IMG/VR virus record: IMGVR_UViG_3300044796_000657
Span: 186,001 to 250,000 of that record
Direction: 5' to 3' (one strand)
DNA length: 64,000 nt
In this document: positions 50,284 to 61,040 of the stretch, piece by piece
Layout: the number at the start of each line of letters is the position of its first letter
Numbering within the stretch: the first letter of the stretch is position 1
Translations under genes and position numbers: made by a program
The notes under the pieces: model-generated
What the model was told of the DNA's origin: nothing
What the model saw: the letters and a program-made list of their open reading frames with translations, nothing else
Database searches by the model: none

Positions 50284-52785
50284 ATGACAAGACAACAATT
50301 ATTCGATTTGTGCCTCGATGGCCTCAAACAAAGAAACATTACAACCGATGATTATAAAAATAGGTTCTCTGCCGAATGGAAAGAAATCACATCAATGGGC
50401 GAAGACAAATACTTCGCTGAGTTAATAGAAAACAAAACCAAGTTCAAGGAAAATGAAAACAACCTCATCATACCATATCTCTTGGGAATAGTTAACGATT
50501 TCGACATAGACAAACAAGCCAAATTCATCTACGGTGAATGGCCAGATATTGATATTGACTATATTGACGGTGTTCGTGAATACCTCAAAGAAGATTATGC
50601 TAAGAAAGCGTTCGGTGAACAATACGTTTGCAACATTGCCAACTACAACACGTTCGGCATGAAATCAGCCCTGAAAGACATGGCAAGATTATTCAGTCTA
50701 CCTCACGAAGAGGTTGATGCCGTAACGAAAAACATGAAGGATAAGGATGAAGACGGCAAAATATTAACGTGGGATCAAGCTGTCGAAATCTACGACGAGT
50801 TTCGTGAGTATTGCGAAAAGAATCCAGAAGTCGCCGAAGCCGCCAAACAGCTAGTCGGTCGTATTCGTGGTCAAGGCCAACACGCTTCCGGACTGGTTGT
50901 TTCCCGTGTTCCAATTCACGAACATATTCCATTGATTCGTGGTAAAGAAGGTTCGGTAGCAGCAGCTTGGCCAGAAGGACAAAGTAGCAGCGATTTGAGC
51001 ATCGTGGGTTTCATTAAGTTCGACTTCTTGGGACTAGATGGTAATCAAAAGATCGCAAGTGCTTGTAAGATGGCCTGCTTGGAAAAAGAAGAGTACGAAA
51101 AGTGGCAAGACAAAGAAAGTGATCTATACCAAACGTCTACCAAAGTTCTCAGTGCTGTACAAGGCGTGACTGTATGTGCTCTTCCCGGTGAAAATCAACC
51201 TTCGTGGTCCGACACTTCTTATCTTGAAGACAAGAAGTGCTTGGAAATGGCTAACCGTGGAGACCTAAGAATGGTATTCCAATTCGACGGTTCTGCGGGC
51301 ATTCGTAATATGGCGAAAGAGGGTGGCGTTGACAAGTTCGATGACCTTGTAGCTTATACCTCTCTATTCCGTCCCGGCCCTATGAAACTCGGTGCCCACG
51401 AACAATACATTAAACGTAAAAGAGGAACAGAGGAATGGTCAGTGCATCCGCTACTGGCAGAAGGCCCGGCCAATCTTCAATCCACGTATGGTGTACACGT
51501 ATACCAAGAGCAAATCTCACGGGTTCTCCACACGGTAGGTAAGATTCCACTCGGCGACTGTGAAACTGTACGTAAGGCTATCTCAAAGAAGAAAATTGAG
51601 AAGTTCCAAAAATACAAGGATATGTTCATTGCCAATGGACAAATCACCTTGGGGGCGACGATTGAAGAACTGGAACACTTGTGGGCACTCCTAGAGGCGT
51701 TCGCTGGTTACGGTTTCAATCAATCACACGCAGTAGGTTATTGTTACATATCTTCAAGAATGCTTTGGCTCAAATGCCATTTGCCGAAACAATTCTTTGC
51801 TTCGATGTTAACTCACACCAAAACCAGCAGTCAAAAAGACTATGACAAACTGAAAGAATACAAACGGGAATCAGAACGCAACAAGGTCAAAATAGAAAGA
51901 CTCCACCTCAACAAGTCCAAAAACGAATTCGTCGCAGATGACAAGTACGTCTATTGGGGATTCTGCAAGATCAAGGGTATTGGTGAAGATGCCGCCAAGA
52001 GAATTGAAGAACTTCAACCATTCGCTGGTATTGAAGACTTCCTTACACGATACGGTACAGATGCCAAAGTTGTTCAACCGCTCATTGCTTTGGGATGTTT
52101 CCAAGAAGCCGATCCATTAACTTTGGCAACCTTCTATGAAGCATACAAAGATTACGACAAAAAAGAAAATGACCGAAACAAACGCTTCCTGAAAAACAAG
52201 GAAAAACTTGAAGCCGAAATTACAGAAGCAACTGATGCCGACAAAATCAAACTAGAAAAGAAACTCGCAACCTGTATTGCCAACAAGTATAAAAAAGACG
52301 ACTTTGCGGAACGTCCAACATTGACCAACTTTAATCACGACTTCAAGATTAAAGCCGACTTCCTTGAAATACTCAAAGACAAAACAGGGGAAGCCGCTGA
52401 AGTTGCTTATTACGGTTTTGTTTGGCAGCACCCGATTGAAAAACTGACTAACTATCAAGGTTTGACCATTGCCCAATTCATCGAAGAAGGCGAAAAGCAC
52501 GGACAGATCGAAGTCCTGCTGAAAGAAGTCAAACAAGTACAAGGCCCGAAAGCAACATACTACAGCGTCCAATTTGAAGATTCAGCATACATGAAACGGA
52601 AGATGACGTTATGGCAAAACGACTACGAAAGGTTCAAGGATGAATTTGTGGTCGGCAACTATGTTAGATTGCATGTAGACGCCCCAAAGCCTCCATATCC
52701 AACCTACGGACTTCACCAATTCCCCGGCGGAAAATGGAAAATGCCTAAAAAAGAAAGCGATTATCGAGTCGTTAGCTTGACCTAA
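50284..52785 (+). CDS. dnaE: DNA polymerase III alpha subunit lacking PHP domain
   Basis: PDIDID, HASG, KFDFLGL, VFQF, RPGP, YQEQ, YGFN.SHA, IKGIG, C-terminal OB. Confidence 0.92.
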   Translation: MTRQQLFDLCLDGLKQRNITTDDYKNRFSAEWKEITSMGEDKYFAELIENKTKFKENENNLIIPYLLGIVNDFDIDKQAKFIYGEWPDIDIDYIDGVREYLKEDYAKKAFGEQYVCNIANYNTFGMKSALKDMARLFSLPHEEVDAVTKNMKDKDEDGKILTWDQAVEIYDEFREYCEKNPEVAEAAKQLVGRIRGQGQHASGLVVSRVPIHEHIPLIRGKEGSVAAAWPEGQSSSDLSIVGFIKFDFLGLDGNQKIASACKMACLEKEEYEKWQDKESDLYQTSTKVLSAVQGVTVCALPGENQPSWSDTSYLEDKKCLEMANRGDLRMVFQFDGSAGIRNMAKEGGVDKFDDLVAYTSLFRPGPMKLGAHEQYIKRKRGTEEWSVHPLLAEGPANLQSTYGVHVYQEQISRVLHTVGKIPLGDCETVRKAISKKKIEKFQKYKDMFIANGQITLGATIEELEHLWALLEAFAGYGFNQSHAVGYCYISSRMLWLKCHLPKQFFASMLTHTKTSSQKDYDKLKEYKRESERNKVKIERLHLNKSKNEFVADDKYVYWGFCKIKGIGEDAAKRIEELQPFAGIEDFLTRYGTDAKVVQPLIALGCFQEADPLTLATFYEAYKDYDKKENDRNKRFLKNKEKLEAEITEATDADKIKLEKKLATCIANKYKKDDFAERPTLTNFNHDFKIKADFLEILKDKTGEAAEVAYYGFVWQHPIEKLTNYQGLTIAQFIEEGEKHGQIEVLLKEVKQVQGPKATYYSVQFEDSAYMKRKMTLWQNDYERFKDEFVVGNYVRLHVDAPKPPYPTYGLHQFPGGKWKMPKKESDYRVVSLT

Positions 52786-55127: not shown

Positions 55128-55157
55128 AAAAAAGCCAAGCAATGCTTGGCTTTTTTT
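55128..55157. terminator. Bidirectional terminator
   Basis: A6-GCCAAGC-AAT-GCTTGGC-T7. Confidence 0.85.
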
Positions 55158-55644
55158 ATTTATCGGACATCATGCCGGAACCTGCCCCGTATTCATTCAC
55201 TTTTTTTTTAGCAGTAAAATCAGCCAATTGTTTTTTCGCAAATTCTACAACATCACTAACATGATTACACGCAGCAATTGCTGTAGGGGAATTTCTTTTT
55301 TTAGCAGCTTCTTTTTGTATTTTTTGTAATTCCTGTTTAGAAGTTTCAACTTTCTTTTTAGCTTCTTCAAATTTCTTTTGCTGGAACTCTGCTTCTTTTT
55401 TCTTCATTTCGTCTGGCGTTAACTGAATTTCATTAACGACATAGAAACCTTCACGGGGATATTTGGCCGGTGAATAATAGCCATCATGCCTAATGTTTTG
55501 CAAAGAACAAACCTTAATGTTCCTGTCTTCCAATTTGGCATTCTTGCGGGCATTAATGTACCCCTGACTGTAAGCCTCTGCTTCAGCATAAAAAACAAAA
55601 GGCCCACCCAAATAAACGTATCGTAATTGCTTTGGCACGATCAT
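55156..55644 (-). CDS. hypothetical coiled-coil protein
   Basis: 162-aa ORF downstream of ncRNA cluster. Confidence 0.55.
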   Translation of the reverse strand: MIVPKQLRYVYLGGPFVFYAEAEAYSQGYINARKNAKLEDRNIKVCSLQNIRHDGYYSPAKYPREGFYVVNEIQLTPDEMKKKEAEFQQKKFEEAKKKVETSKQELQKIQKEAAKKRNSPTAIAACNHVSDVVEFAKKQLADFTAKKKVNEYGAGSGMMSDK

Positions 55645-55653
55645 TCTCTCTGG

Positions 55654-55834
55654 GTGGACATTAAAAAAAATCTCGTTTATGGTATTTCACCACGACCGGC
55701 GTTGACACTTAACTCTATCTAACCCAGACAGACTACACAGATAATAACCCATTGCTGTGAGGCCGATAGAGAAGTATCCGGTTTACTCATAGCCCACTCA
55801 TCTCTAATGATGAGCTAACGAGACCATCATCCAC
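55654..55834 (-). ncRNA. Y-RNA-like structured element C
   Basis: GTGGA/TCCAC, TCTCGTT/AACGAGA, GCTCATC/GATGAGT, CCGG/CCGG, GATACTT/AAGTGTC, CTCTATC/GATAGAG helices; ATACTTC motif; downstream of Ro60. Confidence 0.55.
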
Positions 55835-55874
55835 TATCCGTTCCGATAACCGGCAAGAGTCGTGGATGAAAATT

Positions 55875-55949
55875 TCACGAAAACGGCGAAAGGTTAATGT
55901 GAGGGTAACATTTAGCAGATGTACTCACATCGAGATCCGTAATTCGTGA
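55875..55949 (-). ncRNA. Y-RNA-like minimal hairpin B
   Basis: TCACGAA/TTCGTGA, ACGG/CCGT, ATGTGAG/CTCACAT with GTACATC motif and pyrimidine-rich 3' bulge CCTTTCG. Confidence 0.6.
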
Positions 55950-55974
55950 TTCAAAAAGGGTTCAAAGCCCTTCG

Positions 55975-56048
55975 TGACTGAATGATGGAATTGAACCATC
56001 CTATCTTGTGGGTATAAACCACTGACGCCCCCGTGGCAATTCATACCC
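55975..56048 (-). ncRNA. degenerate tRNA-like element
   Basis: T-arm GATGG-TTCAATT-CCATC (55984-56000), anticodon-like GTGG-TTTATAC-CCAC, short D-arm GCC/GGC, 5-bp acceptor TGAAT/ATTCA. Confidence 0.55.
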
Positions 56049-56053
56049 ATATA

Positions 56054-57667
56054 TTACTCTTCATCACCTTCATCTTCAATAGAAGATTTTCGCAGGTGTT
56101 TACCGTCTAAATCAATCTTCACAATCTCGCCCACAACATGGTCGGCATCCATATTGCCATCAACGAATTGCTTAACCAACTTGAAGACGTTGTCACTAAA
56201 CCCGCCAAGGTTCAGAACATCCTTCATTTCCTGTACTTGCGTAGTGGCGTACGGTGCTACGTCGATACAAACCAACTTCGCCTTCGGATTACGCTGCTTC
56301 CAACGCTTCCATTCGGCTTGGAATTGACTCTCACCCTTCAATCTCTTACCGTACCGATCCGTATTCAACGATTCACACCAAGATTGATTGTCCGATACGC
56401 AGATCAGCAAATCGCCAACCCTGTTCGCATCGTTCAACAACTTAAGTGGCGCCCAACAAGCCGTACCACCATCCGCAATCTTACCGATTGCCGACGCATT
56501 CGCCATCACAGATTGCTCCGGATCGACATTGAATGGTACAACATGCTTTTGGAAGAACATCATTTCAGCGTTCGGATTGTTTCTCTTGAAACAAGACGCA
56601 ATCAGCGCAGCCACATCCACACAACGAGTTACCGTTGAAGCCGATCCACGACCGCCCGTCACTGGGTACGTCATGGACTTGGAAACATCGGTAAAGACGT
56701 ACGCAGGAACGCTATCCTTGTAATGCGTCTCAAACGACGGAATGTTGCGAGTAGCAATCTCCATCGCCCGTTCCAAACCATCCCGCAACTCGACAGGCAC
56801 ACCAACGGTATTTTGGTACGCCGTCATAATCTGATACGGAAATACGGAAGCCTTTTTGATCGACACAGGATCAGCCAAGCGGTTTGCAAGCAATTCAACC
56901 ATCCCCGGCACGTTAAACACACCTTGTCGTTGAAGAGTTGCCAGATTACGGAGCAACCAGAACCAGCTCGCCTTTTGAGCGATTTCGGCCCATTGATCGG
57001 TGCCTAACTTTTTGGCAGTATACATACGGAAATCCGTCTTCGGCATTTCCTTAGTTTCGCCCTTCTTCCACGCTTCGTAAACCTTAACCGATTCCGGCAA
57101 CGCATCATGGTTAAATGGTCGGTCAACCATCATACCATAAAGGGCGGAACGAGTCTTATCCAATGGGCGTGGGTGAATGTTCTTCAAGATCGTCTTGAGA
57201 GAAGGCGTACCGACGCTCTGTTGCCAGATTTCCGTAGGCGTACGGCTATTCAACCAATTAACCATTAACTCTTTTGGAACGGTTCCAAAAGACTTACGAC
57301 CGGTCTTGCCAGATCGAATGATTTGGTAGAAATTGCGGAACATCGTGCCATCGTTAATGACACGTACGAAAGTCTTACGAAGCAGCTTCGTTTCCTTGCG
57401 TGCAGCTAATACAGCGCATAACAAGGCCGGAACATCCTTCATAAAGTACAATTCACGGCTGAACACGGCACACTGCGCCACGAATTCAGGCTCCACAATC
57501 ATTGCGGCATTTTGAATTTGATCTAGCTGTTTCTTGGCACTCACGTAAAGCGTGTTGCCGAGACATGAAGTCGTGCTGAGTAAAGCAAGGGTTTGCTTGG
57601 GCGTTAATTGATACGCTACACCACCAGCCTCATTGAAAGAATCCAAAGAACTAAATAACTTATTCAT
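56054..57667 (-). CDS. Ro60/TROVE domain RNA-binding protein (Rsr)
   Basis: NEAGG.AY, MKDVPALL, GRKSFG, HPRP, LRNL.T..R.GV, FPYQ...AY, vWA DVS.SM..PVTG.RGS, GGT, VSDNQSW, GGFSD.VF. Confidence 0.95.
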   Translation of the reverse strand: MNKLFSSLDSFNEAGGVAYQLTPKQTLALLSTTSCLGNTLYVSAKKQLDQIQNAAMIVEPEFVAQCAVFSRELYFMKDVPALLCAVLAARKETKLLRKTFVRVINDGTMFRNFYQIIRSGKTGRKSFGTVPKELMVNWLNSRTPTEIWQQSVGTPSLKTILKNIHPRPLDKTRSALYGMMVDRPFNHDALPESVKVYEAWKKGETKEMPKTDFRMYTAKKLGTDQWAEIAQKASWFWLLRNLATLQRQGVFNVPGMVELLANRLADPVSIKKASVFPYQIMTAYQNTVGVPVELRDGLERAMEIATRNIPSFETHYKDSVPAYVFTDVSKSMTYPVTGGRGSASTVTRCVDVAALIASCFKRNNPNAEMMFFQKHVVPFNVDPEQSVMANASAIGKIADGGTACWAPLKLLNDANRVGDLLICVSDNQSWCESLNTDRYGKRLKGESQFQAEWKRWKQRNPKAKLVCIDVAPYATTQVQEMKDVLNLGGFSDNVFKLVKQFVDGNMDADHVVGEIVKIDLDGKHLRKSSIEDEGDEE

Positions 57668-58127
57668 TTAAATTTTTCCTTATTGGTATGGTGTAGTTTC
57701 TACTATCCCAAGTTCTCTTGAGGTGACAGTTAGAACATCTAACTTCACATTTTTTGATTTCCTCACACAATTTTTCAATATTAACTTTTTTACTGTATGC
57801 CAATTCACTCAAACCGGCTTTTTTATCACCTCTCACATGATCAAACTGTAAGACTCTAGGATCTTTTTCACCACAATCAACACAAGGATGAGACTCTTTA
57901 TACTCCCAAAGAAATTGACGATTTAAGTCTCTTCTTTGTTCGGCCCACTGTTTGGAACGAATATAATAATTGCCTTGATCTTTGTTTTTCCGATAAGAGT
58001 TCCTATGGTATTCGTTGGCACATTCTTTACACGAATTCAAAAGTCCATCTTTGGAAGCCGTATTTTTTGGAAATAAATCGTATGGCTTACTTAATTTACA
58101 CCTAAAACATAATTTCATAAATGTCAA
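57660..58127 (-). CDS. HNH endonuclease
   Basis: CFRC...CKEC N-terminal Zn finger; CVDCGE.D..VL.FDH...C.V.C.NCH. Confidence 0.85.
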   Translation of the reverse strand: MTFMKLCFRCKLSKPYDLFPKNTASKDGLLNSCKECANEYHRNSYRKNKDQGNYYIRSKQWAEQRRDLNRQFLWEYKESHPCVDCGEKDPRVLQFDHVRGDKKAGLSELAYSKKVNIEKLCEEIKKCEVRCSNCHLKRTWDSRNYTIPIRKNLNE

Positions 58128-58138
58128 ACCTTATTCAA

Positions 58139-58684
58139 TCATACCTTATTACCACAAATTTTCAATCGCTCTTTATGATGAACAATTGCATCTGGTAAGG
58201 CAATTTTCTCCTGCTCAAAAACTTTACTAGCTAAAGTCTCCGGCGTATCACCCTCTTCTACCGCAACAATACGCTGTGTAATGATTGGCCCTTGATCGTA
58301 CTGATTCGTGACGTAATGAACAGTGCATCCACTAAACTTAACACCACTCTCAATCGCCGCTTTATGTACATTGATTCCAAACATCCCCTTGCCACCGAAA
58401 GCAGGTAAAAGGGACGGATGAATATTAATTACTTTTCCAGCGTAATCAGGCGGAATTTCAAGCATTTTGAGAAAGCCAGCCAAAACAATTAACTCAACTT
58501 TTTTCTCTCTTGCGAACTTAAAAAACTCTTTTGTTTCACGACAAATAACTGTTGGTATTCCAGCCTTTTCAGCAATAGCCAAACCGGGGCATTCTTTCGT
58601 AGAACCTACCCAAACAATCTTAAAATTCTTATCAATGAGATTAGCTAATGATCTACCTGTGCCGCTAATGAGTACTGCTATCAT
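58139..58684 (-). CDS. purN: phosphoribosylglycinamide formyltransferase
   Basis: IAVLISG.G, VLAGF, INIHPSLLP.FGGKG, SGCTVH.V...D.GPI; start at ATG 58684. Confidence 0.92.
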   Translation of the reverse strand: MIAVLISGTGRSLANLIDKNFKIVWVGSTKECPGLAIAEKAGIPTVICRETKEFFKFAREKKVELIVLAGFLKMLEIPPDYAGKVINIHPSLLPAFGGKGMFGINVHKAAIESGVKFSGCTVHYVTNQYDQGPIITQRIVAVEEGDTPETLASKVFEQEKIALPDAIVHHKERLKICGNKV

Positions 58685-58775
58685 AATTTTCCCATACAAA
58701 CCCGACAACGCCAACAGGGGTGACTCCACGCTATTGTTTTCTCTGCTGATCTTTTTTGTCGCCACGCCGTTTCAT

Positions 58776-58919
58776 CGGTCAAAATGTCAATAAAAGGTAT
58801 ATCATCAAGGCGTTTTTCAGCTTTGCGATACTTACAGCATTTTTTAGGATTGGTCAACTTAGAATTAACAAAGTAGATGATTTCTGCGTTACGGGTACGA
58901 AGTATCTTATCAGCATCCG
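58776..58919 (-). ncRNA. Y-RNA-like structured element A
   Basis: CGGATGC-TGATAAG-ATACTTC...ACC-TTTTATTG-ACATTTTGACCG terminal stem enclosing ~100-nt domain (ATCATC/GATGAT, CTTTG/CAAAG). Confidence 0.45.
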
Positions 58920-58922
58920 CTT

Positions 58923-59672
58923 CTACCAGTTGGATTTGCGAAGGCTCACAATCCATTGATTCAGGAATGTCTCGTCGCAAGCTTCCGGTAGTTTCCACGG
59001 CTTTAACTCCTCGATAGCAGCGACTCGTTCGTCGACCATTGCTTCGATAGCAGGGAAATCGTACTCATAACGGCGAATTGCCATTAAGAAAGCACGCTCT
59101 TCATTATCTTTCCAAATAACCGGATCACCACCTTGAGCAATCCTCGATGCATCGCCCAACAACCTAAAGATGTGATAAGCAAAGTTTTCAGAACTCTTTT
59201 TAGCCTCGTAGGATCGTCGCAAATGTGACATTTGACCGTCAGCGAATCCTAAGTAATGCTTAACAACTTGTTGCGTGAGAAATTGAGATTTGATTGAGCG
59301 AAGCTCTTCCCATTCAGATGACCACTCAGCATTCTTCTCGGTAAAAAGCATTTCAATGATGGTCGGATTGCCCTTAACTAGAAGTTTGCTGAACTTCAAA
59401 ACTTCATAAAAAGCATGATCAGGGTATTTGCCTTTATCTCGCTTTTTGTCGTCATGACAGACAGAATCCAATTCCGCCGTGTCGTAATTTAATGCCACAA
59501 CATCACGGGTAGGGACAATGTACACGCCCGCATAATCCCGGTCACTTAACAGGTGATGGGTATTGTGGCAGCGACTCCCGGCGAGTTTGCCGAAAATGAC
59601 ACGACCCGGCATAGGGCGGCTTTTCAAAAACTGCCTGTAGCCGGGTTCTTCGTCAGTGAGTAAGTTTTTCAT
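58923..59672 (-). CDS. Pol-beta-fold nucleotidyltransferase (RlaP/YcgL-like)
   Basis: GS..H.T....SD.DY.GVY, YE..KF..L..KGNP..IE.LF, YLG.A..Q, H..RL. Confidence 0.85.
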   Translation of the reverse strand: MKNLLTDEEPGYRQFLKSRPMPGRVIFGKLAGSRCHNTHHLLSDRDYAGVYIVPTRDVVALNYDTAELDSVCHDDKKRDKGKYPDHAFYEVLKFSKLLVKGNPTIIEMLFTEKNAEWSSEWEELRSIKSQFLTQQVVKHYLGFADGQMSHLRRSYEAKKSSENFAYHIFRLLGDASRIAQGGDPVIWKDNEERAFLMAIRRYEYDFPAIEAMVDERVAAIEELKPWKLPEACDETFLNQWIVSLRKSNW

Positions 59673-60436: not shown

Positions 60437-61040
60437 AATTCAAACCTTCTTTATCAAGATCAACAATCCAACCTGCCACGAACTCGGTCGTCACAATACT
60501 TGGAAATGATGTAGGAGTAATAGTACCAGATGTAATATTACAACCCTTCAACTCTTTTTTCAAATGCAAAGATAGGTTATTCAAAGCACACTTACTGACA
60601 CCATAAGCAATCTGCTTATCATATTGCTTAAAAGCACTAGTACTACTGACATTCAAAACTTGTCGATGCTTAATAAGGTTCTTTTCAGGTCTTCGTTTCC
60701 AAAACTTCAAATACAATTCTCTGGTCAACGCATAAGGCCCAACCACATTAACATTGAGAACTTCCAACATTTCTTCCGGCGTCAATTCCTCAATACTCTT
60801 AAGAGCATAAGTGGCTGCGTTGTTAATTAAATAATCTACCTTGCCGTGAACATCCAAAGCTTCTTCGATAATGTCTTCATAATCTCTAGCTACATCACCA
60901 TGAATGATTATATCACATCCGGCTGGTTTAGGGCCAGAACGTGCCACACCAATAATCGCATAATCCTTATGATGATTTTGACAAAAGCTCTTGCCTAAAG
61001 TTCCCGTCACGCCAGTAATCAGTGCCACTCTCTTAGCCAT
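60405..61040 (-). CDS. short-chain dehydrogenase/reductase
   Basis: ITGVTGTLG, LINNAA, NVSS, YGVSK. Confidence 0.9.
   Translation of the reverse strand: MAKRVALITGVTGTLGKSFCQNHHKDYAIIGVARSGPKPAGCDIIIHGDVARDYEDIIEEALDVHGKVDYLINNAATYALKSIEELTPEEMLEVLNVNVVGPYALTRELYLKFWKRRPEKNLIKHRQVLNVSSTSAFKQYDKQIAYGVSKCALNNLSLHLKKELKGCNITSGTITPTSFPSIVTTEFVAGWIVDLDKEGLNYEKTRSARNF

What the first reader, a model, noticed from the sequence alone, without database searches (positions are those of the whole stretch)
55654..59672. Ro60 + RlaP locus with a family of Y-RNA-like elements that share a Ro-type stem but carry different, non-tRNA inner domains
Seen: around the TROVE gene, three intergenic minus-strand elements (A 58776-58919, B 55875-55949, C 55654-55834) share the order GG..-helix-TAC(T/A)TC-[insert]-helix. 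A and B also have a pyrimidine-rich 3' end. The inserts differ: ~100 nt branched in A, ~14 nt in B, ~60 nt closed by CTCTATC/GATAGAG in C. Established: bacterial Ro60 (Rsr) genes are flanked by Y RNAs built from a Ro-binding stem plus an effector module (tRNA-like in YrlA), and RlaP-type Pol-beta nucleotidyltransferases associate with RNA repair. Inference: this phage encodes a modular Ro60 RNP toolkit in which one protein is retargeted by several RNAs with novel effector domains, for RNA repair or decoying of host anti-phage nucleases.
Basis: partly seen in the sequence, partly recalled or inferred. Interest (0 to 1): 0.85.

Follow-up and report, generated by a model that had tools for sequence, protein, structure and literature searches.

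The report
One Y RNA beside phage Ro60
Beside the Ro60 gene of this huge phage there is one genuine Y RNA of the known bacterial and phage YrlA type, in a short form without the tRNA-like part; of the other two proposed RNAs, one lies inside a small protein-coding gene and the other is a structured RNA of unproven kind.

Summary
The window comes from a 430-kb IMG/VR phage contig. Minus-strand gene order is RlaP, a 91-aa Cys-motif gene, a PurN-like gene, an HNH endonuclease, Ro60, then 410 nt of non-coding sequence.

- **Element B (55872-55951):** a real Y RNA. It belongs to a family with strong covariation (39 copies, 94.7% of cells paired against 63.5% in shuffles, all 15 pairs with double changes). 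The model found 210 further matches in 75 metagenomic Ro60 loci, all on the Ro60 strand. Long members coincide with Rfam YrlA (RF02553). B is a short form: it keeps the Ro module, P2, UACAU and the V hairpin but lacks the T/acceptor/D arms.
- **Element A:** not intergenic. It lies inside a conserved 91-aa gene and folds no better than shuffles.
- **Element C:** significantly structured (z -3.6) and ends in U8. It has no homologue and scores about 0 bits with the family models. Its kind is unresolved.
a degenerate tRNA-like element directly after the Ro60 stop codon.

The "three Y RNAs with novel effector domains" reading is only partly supported. This is a new member of a known kind.

The parts
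58923..59672 (-). RlaP-family Pol-beta nucleotidyltransferase gene (249 aa)
   Evidence: Pfam PF10127, E 9e-16. phrog_388 nucleotidyltransferase, E 5e-37. An RlaP gene lies near Ro60 in L002, L005, L007, L008, L010, L011, L041 and on the P0006 contig.
58681..58956 (-).
   Evidence: Open frame with ATGA stop/start overlap with PurN. The same 91-aa product is called as a gene in public data (P0121). tblastn to called genes L007 3508-3768 (E 2e-7) and L010 3490-3765 (E 5.6e-5). A profile search found 12 proteins of 82-141 aa. The window protein keeps the five invariant columns N23, C41, C81, C84, C87.
58139..58684 (-). PurN-like formyltransferase gene (181 aa)
   Evidence: PF00551, E 2e-32. TIGR00639 PurN, 130.8 bits, below its 150.1 cutoff. 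Syntenic in most clade loci.
57660..58115 (-). HNH endonuclease gene inserted between PurN and Ro60
   Evidence: phrog_2255 HNH endonuclease, E 2e-32. In L002 and L003 a shorter gene with no Pfam hit on record occupies this position; they were not compared.
56054..57667 (-). Ro60 (TROVE + vWA) gene, 537 aa
   Evidence: PF25045, E 1.4e-14, and PF05731. phrog_850. NF041674 Rsr, 53 bits, far below its cutoff. Homologues at 50-69% identity in related metagenomic phage-like contigs.
55974..56046 (-). Element D: degenerate tRNA-like element (pseudo-tRNA; perfect T arm GATGG/TTCAATT/CCATC; weak D arm; mismatched acceptor stem)
   Evidence: Rfam tRNA 14.1 bits, below the 29-bit gathering score. ARAGORN calls it only at 85% threshold as Ile(tat); 2 of 300 shuffles give any call. 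L003 has a true tRNA-Thr at this position. L002 has two sub-threshold tRNA-like elements.
55951..55977 (-). Small hairpin followed by U5 (weak terminator-like)
   Evidence: Fold. Not listed by the terminator scan.
55872..55951 (-). Element B: short-form YrlA-family Y RNA. P1 is 55949-55943/55881-55875 plus 55940-55937/55886-55883. The Ro-type motif CGGAU is at 55939-55935, opposite CGCCG. P2 is 55931-55924/55903-55896. UACAU is at 55923-55919 and begins a small V-like hairpin.
   Evidence: R1 61.7 bits, R2 44.6 bits. Covariation. The single-sequence fold equals the consensus structure, z -3.45.
55827..55869 (-). Element E: local hairpin. Its 5' arm CCACGAC could alternatively pair with GUCGUGG at about 55693-55687.
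   Evidence: Fold z -2.25. The alternative pairing was read from the sequence and is not tested.
55663..55825 (-). Element C core: branched structured RNA of unknown kind. It has a closing stem GGUCUCGU/ACGAGAU followed by U8, and three inner hairpins (cloverleaf-like topology with an ~85-nt middle arm).
Evidence: No ORF longer than 23 aa. No Rfam match. No homologue in about 120 loci. Relaxed ARAGORN with a forced intron calls a cloverleaf, but 8% of shuffles do too.
55156..55644 (-). Downstream 162-aa ORF of unknown function, followed by a strong intrinsic terminator at 55128-55156

Best explanation
**What is there.** This is an RNA repair / RNA quality-control gene cluster of a huge phage. 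The genes are RlaP, a small Cys-motif protein, a PurN-like enzyme, an HNH endonuclease and Ro60.

Ro60 is followed on the same strand by a 410-nt non-coding cluster. Read 5' to 3', the cluster holds:
- a degenerate tRNA-like element (D);
- one genuine Y RNA (B);
- a hairpin (E);
- a ~165-nt branched RNA ending in U8 (C).

**What B is.** B is a short-form member of the YrlA family. Its paired 5' and 3' ends form stem P1. An asymmetric internal loop with CGGAU on the 5' strand opposite CGCCG is the counterpart of the conserved CGAAUG / CUUGUCG module. Hairpin P2 has a loop that begins with UACAU and forms the small V hairpin. The T, acceptor and D arms of full-length YrlA are absent.

**How it most likely works (inferred by analogy).** B binds the outer face of the phage Ro60 ring through the P1 / internal-loop module. 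It then gates the ring's cavity and/or tethers Ro60 to a host 3'-5' exoribonuclease such as PNPase. RlaP would restore 3' nucleotides on damaged RNAs.

**The other two elements.** Element A is not an RNA element; it is coding sequence. Element C is a real structured transcript segment whose partner and role are unknown.
For: **B and its family**
- Nine copies from seven Ro60 loci give 15 predicted pairs, 13 with compensatory changes.
- Model R1 finds unseeded copies in L013 (two), L007, L002 and L010, and 35 matches, all on the Ro60 strand, in 25 IMG/VR phage Ro60 loci.
- In the 39-copy alignment, 94.7% of cells pair against 63.5% in shuffles and 34-52% with slid partners. All 15 pairs show double changes.
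- Model R2 finds 210 matches in 75 metagenomic Ro60 loci, all on the + (Ro60) strand.
- Long matches have the order CGAAUG - P2 - CUACAU - V - T arm - hairpin - D arm.
- Long matches coincide with Rfam RF02553 YrlA hits at L063 5360-5487 and L082 4146-4279 and 4322-4466.
- Chen et al. 2014 (PMC4201824) define the same features: the GNCGAAN0-1G motif, YUAY starting the V loop, and location within 4 kb of Ro60 on the same strand.

**A is coding:**

**D:**

**C and the cluster:** C is structured. The whole 412-nt cluster folds with z -3.95.

**Functional analogy**
- Y RNA tethers Ro60 to PNPase in D. radiodurans and S. Typhimurium (PMC4201824).
- Thermus phage phiLo Ro60 forms a complex with its Yrl RNAs and host PNPase (PMC12135203).
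- RlaP adds one or two nucleotides to damaged RNA 3' ends (bioRxiv 10.64898/2025.12.29.696909).
- Ro/TROVE and RlaP are noted in jumbo phages (PMC7824862).
Against: - B is a divergent member. It has CGGAUC rather than CGAAUG and UUUCGCCG rather than CUUGUCG, and its first YUAY base is G.
- Rfam YrlA does not detect B even at E <= 10.
- No expression or binding data exist for any of these RNAs.
- R2 finds nothing near Ro60 in phiLo, Mx1, GMA2, Samisti12 or Va1. The link to the experimentally bound phiLo RNAs therefore rests only on the CGAA motif and genomic context.
- No promoter or clean terminator delimits B.
- The roles of C, D and E are open.
Confidence: 0.78

Rival explanations
1. A, B and C are three Y-RNA-like partners of one Ro60. 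They share a Ro-type stem and the TAC(T/A)TC motif and carry different novel effector domains that retarget the protein.
For: - B is real.
- In related loci the same Ro module does carry inserts of 12-130 nt.
- A tripartite regular expression (CGRAT[GC]..TAC[AT]T..YTTYGY) hits only B and 58919-58868 in the window, against 0.35 expected. This pattern was written after seeing A.
- The long arm of C starts with CCGGAUAC opposite ACGCCGG, which resembles B's CGGAUC / UCGCCG (sequence).
Against: - A lies in a conserved protein-coding gene and shows no structure signal.
- A and C score below 4 bits with both family models, even with filters off.
- Neither has a homologue in about 120 Ro60 loci.
- Alignment of B to A and C is at chance level.
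- TACWTC occurs 80 times in the window.
- The A gap does not exist in L002, L003 and L011, where RlaP and PurN abut.
Confidence: 0.08
2. C is a tRNA-derived or tRNA-like RNA. It would have an acceptor-like closing stem, a D-arm-like first hairpin (UAGCUCA...UAGAG), an expanded middle arm and a small T-position hairpin. C and D would then be free-standing tRNA-like partners that replace the embedded tRNA-like domain of full-length YrlA.
For: - The predicted fold of C has four helices in a cloverleaf-like arrangement.
- In the closest relatives, sub-threshold tRNA-like elements (a true tRNA-Thr in L003) lie in the same region (L002, L003); those of L004 and L042 were read by eye from sequence.
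- Short Y RNAs lie beside these elements in L002, L004 and L042.
- Every family match in the clade loci is a short form.
Against: - 8% of shuffles of C also give an ARAGORN call under those settings.
- C has no T-loop consensus.
- Neither the tRNA nor the YrlA model of Rfam matches C.
- There is no homologue on which to test covariation.
Confidence: 0.2
3. C, together with hairpin E, is a cis-acting leader or attenuator, or simply the structured 3' end and terminator of the non-coding cluster. It would control read-through into the downstream 162-aa gene rather than act as a trans-acting Ro60 partner.
For: - The closing stem plus U8 ends 19 nt before the ATG at 55644.
- In relatives the non-coding cluster ends in a canonical terminator at the equivalent place.
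- Two mutually exclusive long-range pairings exist: CCACGAC/GUCGUGG against UCUCGUU/AACGAGA (sequence; folds).
Against: - The stem that precedes U8 closes a ~150-nt multi-branch loop, which is atypical for an intrinsic terminator.
- The terminator scan does not list it.
- No known riboswitch or leader family matches.
Confidence: 0.3

Closest known systems
YrlA (Rfam RF02553; Chen et al. 2014, PMC4201824), the tRNA-mimicking Y RNA of bacteria and phages
   Same: - Encoded just downstream of Ro60 on the same strand.
- The 5' and 3' ends pair.
- A conserved CGAA-type motif on the 5' strand of the stem.
- A hairpin whose loop begins YUAY (here GUACAU) and forms the V hairpin.
- The covariance model built from B and its relatives hits the same intervals as RF02553 in L063 and L082.
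   Different: - B lacks the T arm, acceptor-like hairpin and D arm, and is 80 nt long rather than about 115-150 nt.
- The motif is CGGAUC, with a compensating C on the 3' strand.
- RF02553 gives no match, even at E <= 10.
YrlB of S. Typhimurium and M. smegmatis, and Yrn2 of D. radiodurans: second, shorter Ro60-bound Y RNAs (PMC4201824)
   Same: - A short Y RNA encoded beside Ro60, with the CGAA-type motif and no full tRNA-like domain.
- A tRNA or tRNA-like gene lies in the same cluster. In D. radiodurans, Yrn2, tRNA-Asp and Yrn1 are made as one precursor.
   Different: - YrlB and Yrn2 are defined experimentally and have no sequence family of their own.
- B is demonstrably homologous to the stem part of YrlA.
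- Binding of B to Ro60 has not been tested.
Yrl1 and Yrl2 of Thermus phage phiLo (PMC12135203)
   Same: Phage-encoded Ro60 with Y-like RNAs identified by a 5'-3' stem and a CGAA motif. There they were shown to bind Ro60 and to form a complex with host PNPase.
   Different: - They lie upstream of Ro60.
- Model R2 does not detect them.
- The phiLo Ro60 is only about 23% identical to the window's protein.
Jumbo-phage RNA repair modules with RlaP and ROT/TROVE (Iyer et al. 2021, PMC7824862)
   Same: RlaP and a TROVE protein with a tRNA-like RNA partner in a very large phage.
   Different: - Here RlaP is syntenic with Ro60, a PurN-like gene and a small Cys-motif protein.
- No RNA ligase was seen among the ORFs between about 50.3 and 64 kb of the window that were scanned against Pfam. 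ORFs outside that stretch were not scanned.

Membership tests
YrlA-type Y RNA (RF02553 / Chen 2014) | Encoded within about 4 kb of a Ro60 orthologue, on the same strand | tested here: met
   B starts 103 nt downstream of the Ro60 stop codon, on the minus strand like Ro60.
YrlA-type Y RNA (RF02553 / Chen 2014) | 5' and 3' ends pair into a stem supported by covariation | tested here: met
   Eight P1 pairs, all with changes on both sides; 91.7% of cells paired. The fold of B alone reproduces the stem.
YrlA-type Y RNA (RF02553 / Chen 2014) | GNCGAAN0-1G motif near the 5' end | tested here: inconclusive
   The family consensus here is (G)NCGAAUG. B has UACGGAUC. The A-to-G change is compensated by C on the 3' strand (column pair 15/162: AU 30, GC 8). 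The final G is C in B.
YrlA-type Y RNA (RF02553 / Chen 2014) | YUAY at the start of the V loop | tested here: inconclusive
   UACAU is invariant in the nine-copy alignment, and B has it. The preceding base is G in B, L002 and L042 rather than a pyrimidine.
YrlA-type Y RNA (RF02553 / Chen 2014) | Internal tRNA-like domain (T arm, acceptor-like hairpin, D arm) | tested here: not met
   The P2 loop of B is 20 nt and holds only the V-like mini-hairpin. Long relatives do have the domain.
YrlA-type Y RNA (RF02553 / Chen 2014) | Reaches the Rfam gathering score for RF02553 | tested here: not met
   No RF02553 match at gathering score or at E <= 10. RF02553 does hit long relatives.
YrlA-type Y RNA (RF02553 / Chen 2014) | Bound by Ro60 in vivo or in vitro | not testable with these tools
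   Needs a gel-shift assay or immunoprecipitation.
Short-form Y RNA family defined here (models R1 and R2) | Significant covariance-model score for each of A, B and C | tested here: not met
   Met for B only: 61.7 bits (R1) and 44.6 bits (R2). A scores at most 3.3 bits and C at most 1.6 bits with filters off.
tRNA (for element D) | Passes ARAGORN default settings or the Rfam tRNA gathering score | tested here: not met
   ARAGORN finds none at default. Rfam tRNA gives 14.1 bits against a 29-bit cutoff. ARAGORN calls it only at 85% threshold; 0.7% of shuffles give a call. The T arm is canonical.
Metazoan / Deinococcus Y RNA families | Match to the corresponding Rfam families | tested here: not met
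   No match from any Y RNA family appears among the Rfam matches in the region at E <= 10.

The most novel reading that the evidence does not exclude
In this clade of huge phages the YrlA RNA has been split into separate parts. A short Ro-binding stem RNA (B-type) would work together with free-standing, degenerate tRNA-like RNAs made from the same non-coding cluster (D, and possibly C). C would be a new class of Ro60 partner whose expanded arm carries a second Ro-type internal loop (CCGGAU / ACGCCGG).
Probability: 0.12. Interest if true: 0.6.

Novelty: new member of a known kind. Interest (0 to 1): 0.3.

Why it matters
- It shows that a clade of very large phages keeps a Ro60 / Y RNA / RlaP module. 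This extends the known YrlA family to short forms that the Rfam model misses.
- It gives a covariance model (R2) that finds such RNAs in many environmental Ro60 loci.
- It corrects an over-reading: one proposed RNA is a conserved small protein gene, and another has no comparative support.
- The biology is still open. What phage Ro60 RNPs do during infection is unknown; candidates are RNA clean-up, tRNA repair after host anticodon nucleases, and capture of host PNPase. B, C and D are concrete RNAs to test.

Tried and rejected
- **Rfam on the window.** Gathering score and E <= 10: no Y RNA, YrlA or tRNA match above threshold.
- **ARAGORN at default settings.** Nothing found.
- **Megablast of the locus against phage records.** No match.
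- **blastn-short and nhmmer of A, C and D against all fetched loci.** Nothing found.
- **R1 and R2 with filters off on A and C.** No meaningful score.
- **Smith-Waterman alignment of the halves of B against A, C and D.** At chance level.
- **R2 on phiLo, Mx1, GMA2, Samisti12 and Va1.** No hits, so there is no direct link to the experimentally bound phiLo RNAs.
- **Word-indexed protein search with the 91-aa ORF.** Only itself was found. The profile search was needed to see the family.
- **TAG read-through of RlaP into region A.** It would add only 22 codons before a TGA, and RlaP is already full length relative to its homologues. Rejected.
- **tmRNA search on C.** Nothing found.
- **Two review papers on bacterial Y RNAs.** Not held in the library.

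Full report
**Source and gene map**

The Ro60 protein of the window is 100% identical over its full length to one encoded on IMGVR_UViG_3300044796_000657, a 430,229-bp viral contig. On the minus strand the genes are:
- RlaP, 58923-59672 (PF10127);
- a 91-aa ORF, 58681-58956;
- a PurN-like formyltransferase, 58139-58684 (PF00551; TIGR00639 at 130.8 bits, below its cutoff);
- an HNH endonuclease, 57660-58115 (phrog_2255);
- Ro60, 56054-57667 (PF25045 and PF05731);
- 410 nt without a credible ORF;
- a 162-aa ORF, 55156-55644, followed by a strong terminator at 55128-55156.

A DNA polymerase III alpha gene lies nearby, at 50284-52785.

Ro60 homologues at 50-69% identity come from metagenomic contigs with the same neighbourhood: RlaP, PurN-like, small genes, Ro60, and sometimes the polymerase III alpha gene. 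The cluster is therefore conserved in a clade of phage-like genomes.

**Element B is a genuine Y RNA**

Reading the sequence downstream of Ro60 in the relatives showed a recurring unit. It consists of:
- a stem;
- CG(A/G)AUG;
- a 7-8-bp hairpin whose loop starts with UACAU;
- CUUUG(C/U)CG;
- the return strand of the stem.

Nine copies from seven loci align with 15 consensus pairs, 13 of which show compensatory changes. A covariance model built from them (R1) recovered unseeded copies in L013 (two), L007, L002 and L010. It also gave 35 matches, all on the Ro60 strand, in 25 IMG/VR phage Ro60 loci.

In an alignment of 39 matches, 94.7% of cells pair, against 63.5% in shuffles and 34-52% when partners are slid. 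All 15 pairs show changes on both sides.

A second model built from that alignment (R2) found 210 matches in 75 metagenomic Ro60 loci. Every match is on the Ro60 strand, and nearly all lie just downstream of the gene.

In the window, B scores 61.7 bits with R1 and 44.6 bits with R2 at 55872-55951. Its single-sequence fold equals the consensus structure, with z -3.45.

**The family is YrlA**

Long matches (100-200 nt) carry their extra sequence inside the P2 loop, right after UACAU. The order is V hairpin, T arm (GGUUCGAAUCC), a hairpin, then a D arm (UAGCUCAG..GGUAGAGC). This is the architecture Chen et al. [quoted passage not shown]

Rfam RF02553 (YrlA) hits L063 5360-5487, L082 4146-4279 and L082 4322-4466. 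These intervals coincide with R2 matches.

B keeps P1, the internal loop, P2, UACAU and the V-like mini-hairpin (ACAU...AUGU). It lacks the T, acceptor and D arms. That is why RF02553 does not see it, even at E <= 10.

All family matches in the clade of the window are short forms of about 70-82 nt. In function B is best compared with the second, shorter Y RNAs (YrlB, Yrn2) that Chen et al. found beside YrlA/Yrn1.

**Element A is coding sequence**

That stretch is one open frame.
- From the ATG at 58956 it encodes 91 aa, and its TGA overlaps the PurN ATG as ATGA.
- Exactly this 91-aa product is on record as a called gene (P0121).
- tblastn matches called genes between RlaP and Ro60 in L007 (E 2e-7) and L010 (E 5.6e-5).
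- The alignment shows conserved RN.E(V/I), C.Y.K, WR..R and a C-terminal PC..C..C motif.
- A profile of four members finds 12 proteins of 82-141 aa among 1.84 billion representatives.
- The window protein keeps all five invariant columns.

As RNA, A folds no better than shuffles (z +0.34 and -0.28). In L002, L003 and L011, RlaP and PurN abut with no gap.

R1 can lay 58931-58854 over the model through CGGAUGC, UAC and CUUUGU, but the helices are broken and the score is 1.8 bits. A regular expression for that tripartite pattern hits only B and this site, against 0.35 expected. I wrote that pattern after seeing A, so I give it little weight.

**Element C is structured but unplaced**

The whole 412-nt cluster folds with z -3.95.

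The fold has a closing stem (GGUCUCGU / ACGAGAU) followed by U8, and three inner hairpins.

C has no ORF longer than 23 aa. It has no Rfam match. It has no sequence relative in about 120 Ro60 loci. It scores essentially nothing with R1 or R2.

TACWTC occurs 80 times in the window.

Two weaker leads remain.
- The base of the long arm reads CCGGAUAC opposite ACGCCGG, which resembles B's CGGAUC / UCGCCG.
- The four-helix layout and a first hairpin beginning UAGCUCA resemble a cloverleaf. ARAGORN calls one at 85% threshold with an intron allowed, but so do 8% of shuffles.

A leader or terminator role for the downstream gene is equally possible. No covariation test can be made, because the nearest Ro60 relative is only 69% identical and lacks C.

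Directly after the Ro60 stop codon lies element D (55974-56046).
- It has a canonical T arm (GATGG / TTCAATT / CCATC), a 4-bp anticodon-like stem, a weak D arm and a mismatched acceptor stem.
- Rfam tRNA gives 14.1 bits, below the 29-bit gathering score.
- ARAGORN calls it only at 85% threshold, where 2 of 300 shuffles give any call.
- L003 has a true tRNA-Thr with a consensus promoter at the same place.
- L002 has two sub-threshold tRNA-like elements. L004 and L042 have T-arm-bearing elements between their two Y RNAs.

The cluster is therefore not free of tRNA-like RNA. The tRNA-like element stands beside the Y RNA rather than inside it. More distant phage Ro60 genes sit in tRNA arrays or beside a tmRNA gene.

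**Mechanism**

Shown here:
- the conserved, covarying structure of B;
- its homology to YrlA;
- its position and strand;
- the conserved synteny with Ro60 and RlaP.

Inferred from established work:
- The 5' strand motif with its stem is the Ro60 contact (PMC4201824).
- Y RNAs gate the Ro60 cavity and tether Ro60 to PNPase in D. radiodurans and S. Typhimurium.
- A phage Ro60 with its Yrl RNAs forms a complex with host PNPase (PMC12135203).
- RlaP adds one or two nucleotides to damaged RNA 3' ends and helps restore repaired tRNA function.
- RlaP and TROVE have been noted as parts of jumbo-phage RNA repair systems (PMC7824862).

The likely role is handling of damaged or misfolded structured RNA during infection. 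Whether the purpose is repair, degradation or counter-defence is not known.

**Verdict**

The finding is partly right. There is a Ro60 + RlaP locus with a Y RNA, but one Y RNA, not three, and it belongs to a known family. Novelty: a new member (short form) of a known kind. Interest is modest. The open item worth a bench test is whether C and D are Ro60 partners.

Noticed in passing
window 58681-58956 (minus); L007 3508-3768; L010 3490-3765; L005 1077-1361: A rare family of small proteins (82-141 aa) with invariant N, C and a C-terminal PC..C..C motif. Its genes lie between RlaP and Ro60 in several loci. Only 12 members were found among 1.84 billion representatives. No Pfam or PHROG family matches.
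   Followed up: yes
L049 4080-5622; L048 4080-5418; L063 4028-5492; L047 2068-2683: Some metagenomic Ro60 loci carry tandem arrays of 6-8 YrlA-family RNAs of different lengths (71-167 nt) directly downstream of Ro60. All 210 R2 matches in 75 loci are on the Ro60 strand.
   Followed up: partly
L004 5301-5406 and L042 2156-2261: A further conserved 106-nt non-coding element lies between the tRNA-like element and the second Y RNA. It has a 9-bp closing stem (UUUAUGUCG / CGRCAUAAA) and an internal CCGAAAA motif. nhmmer finds it only in these two loci.
   Followed up: partly
L003 4515-4624: A consensus sigma-70 promoter (TTGACA, 17 nt, TATAAT) and a true tRNA-Thr(UGU) directly follow the Ro60 stop codon. 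This is the position where the window has the degenerate tRNA-like element D.
   Followed up: partly
L031, L032, L025, L035 (tRNA arrays); L026 6633-7007 and L034 6198-6565 (tmRNA): In more distant IMG/VR phages, Ro60 is embedded in large tRNA gene arrays or lies next to a tmRNA gene, with YrlA-family RNAs interspersed.
   Followed up: no
window 57660-58115 (minus): An HNH endonuclease gene sits between PurN and Ro60. L002 and L003 have shorter genes with no Pfam hit on record in that position. This may be a mobile insertion.
   Followed up: partly
P0121 record: The 91-aa protein is recorded on a contig of 614,480 bp. The phage genome may therefore be larger than the 430-kb IMG/VR contig.
   Followed up: no
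L011 3810-3845 and 3945-3980: A direct repeat of about 35 nt (ATCCTTTCTGGTAACAATGCCTGTTCAGAGGCT) occurs twice upstream of Ro60 in a locus that has no R1-type Y RNA.
   Followed up: no
L011 5620-5700; L041 5640-5950: Clade loci without an R1/R2 match still have 160-330 nt of apparently structured non-coding sequence after Ro60. L011 has GAGCGAAG...CGCUC, possibly a different Y RNA type.
   Followed up: no
window, whole: TACWTC occurs 80 times against 54 +/- 6.7 expected from dinucleotide shuffles. This is a compositional or codon effect unrelated to the RNAs.
   Followed up: no
window 60495-60562 (minus) and 56988-57052 (minus): A weak R1 match (14.5 bits) lies inside the short-chain dehydrogenase gene, and a weak ROSE_3 match (27 bits, below the 43-bit gathering score) lies inside Ro60. 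Both are probably chance.
   Followed up: no
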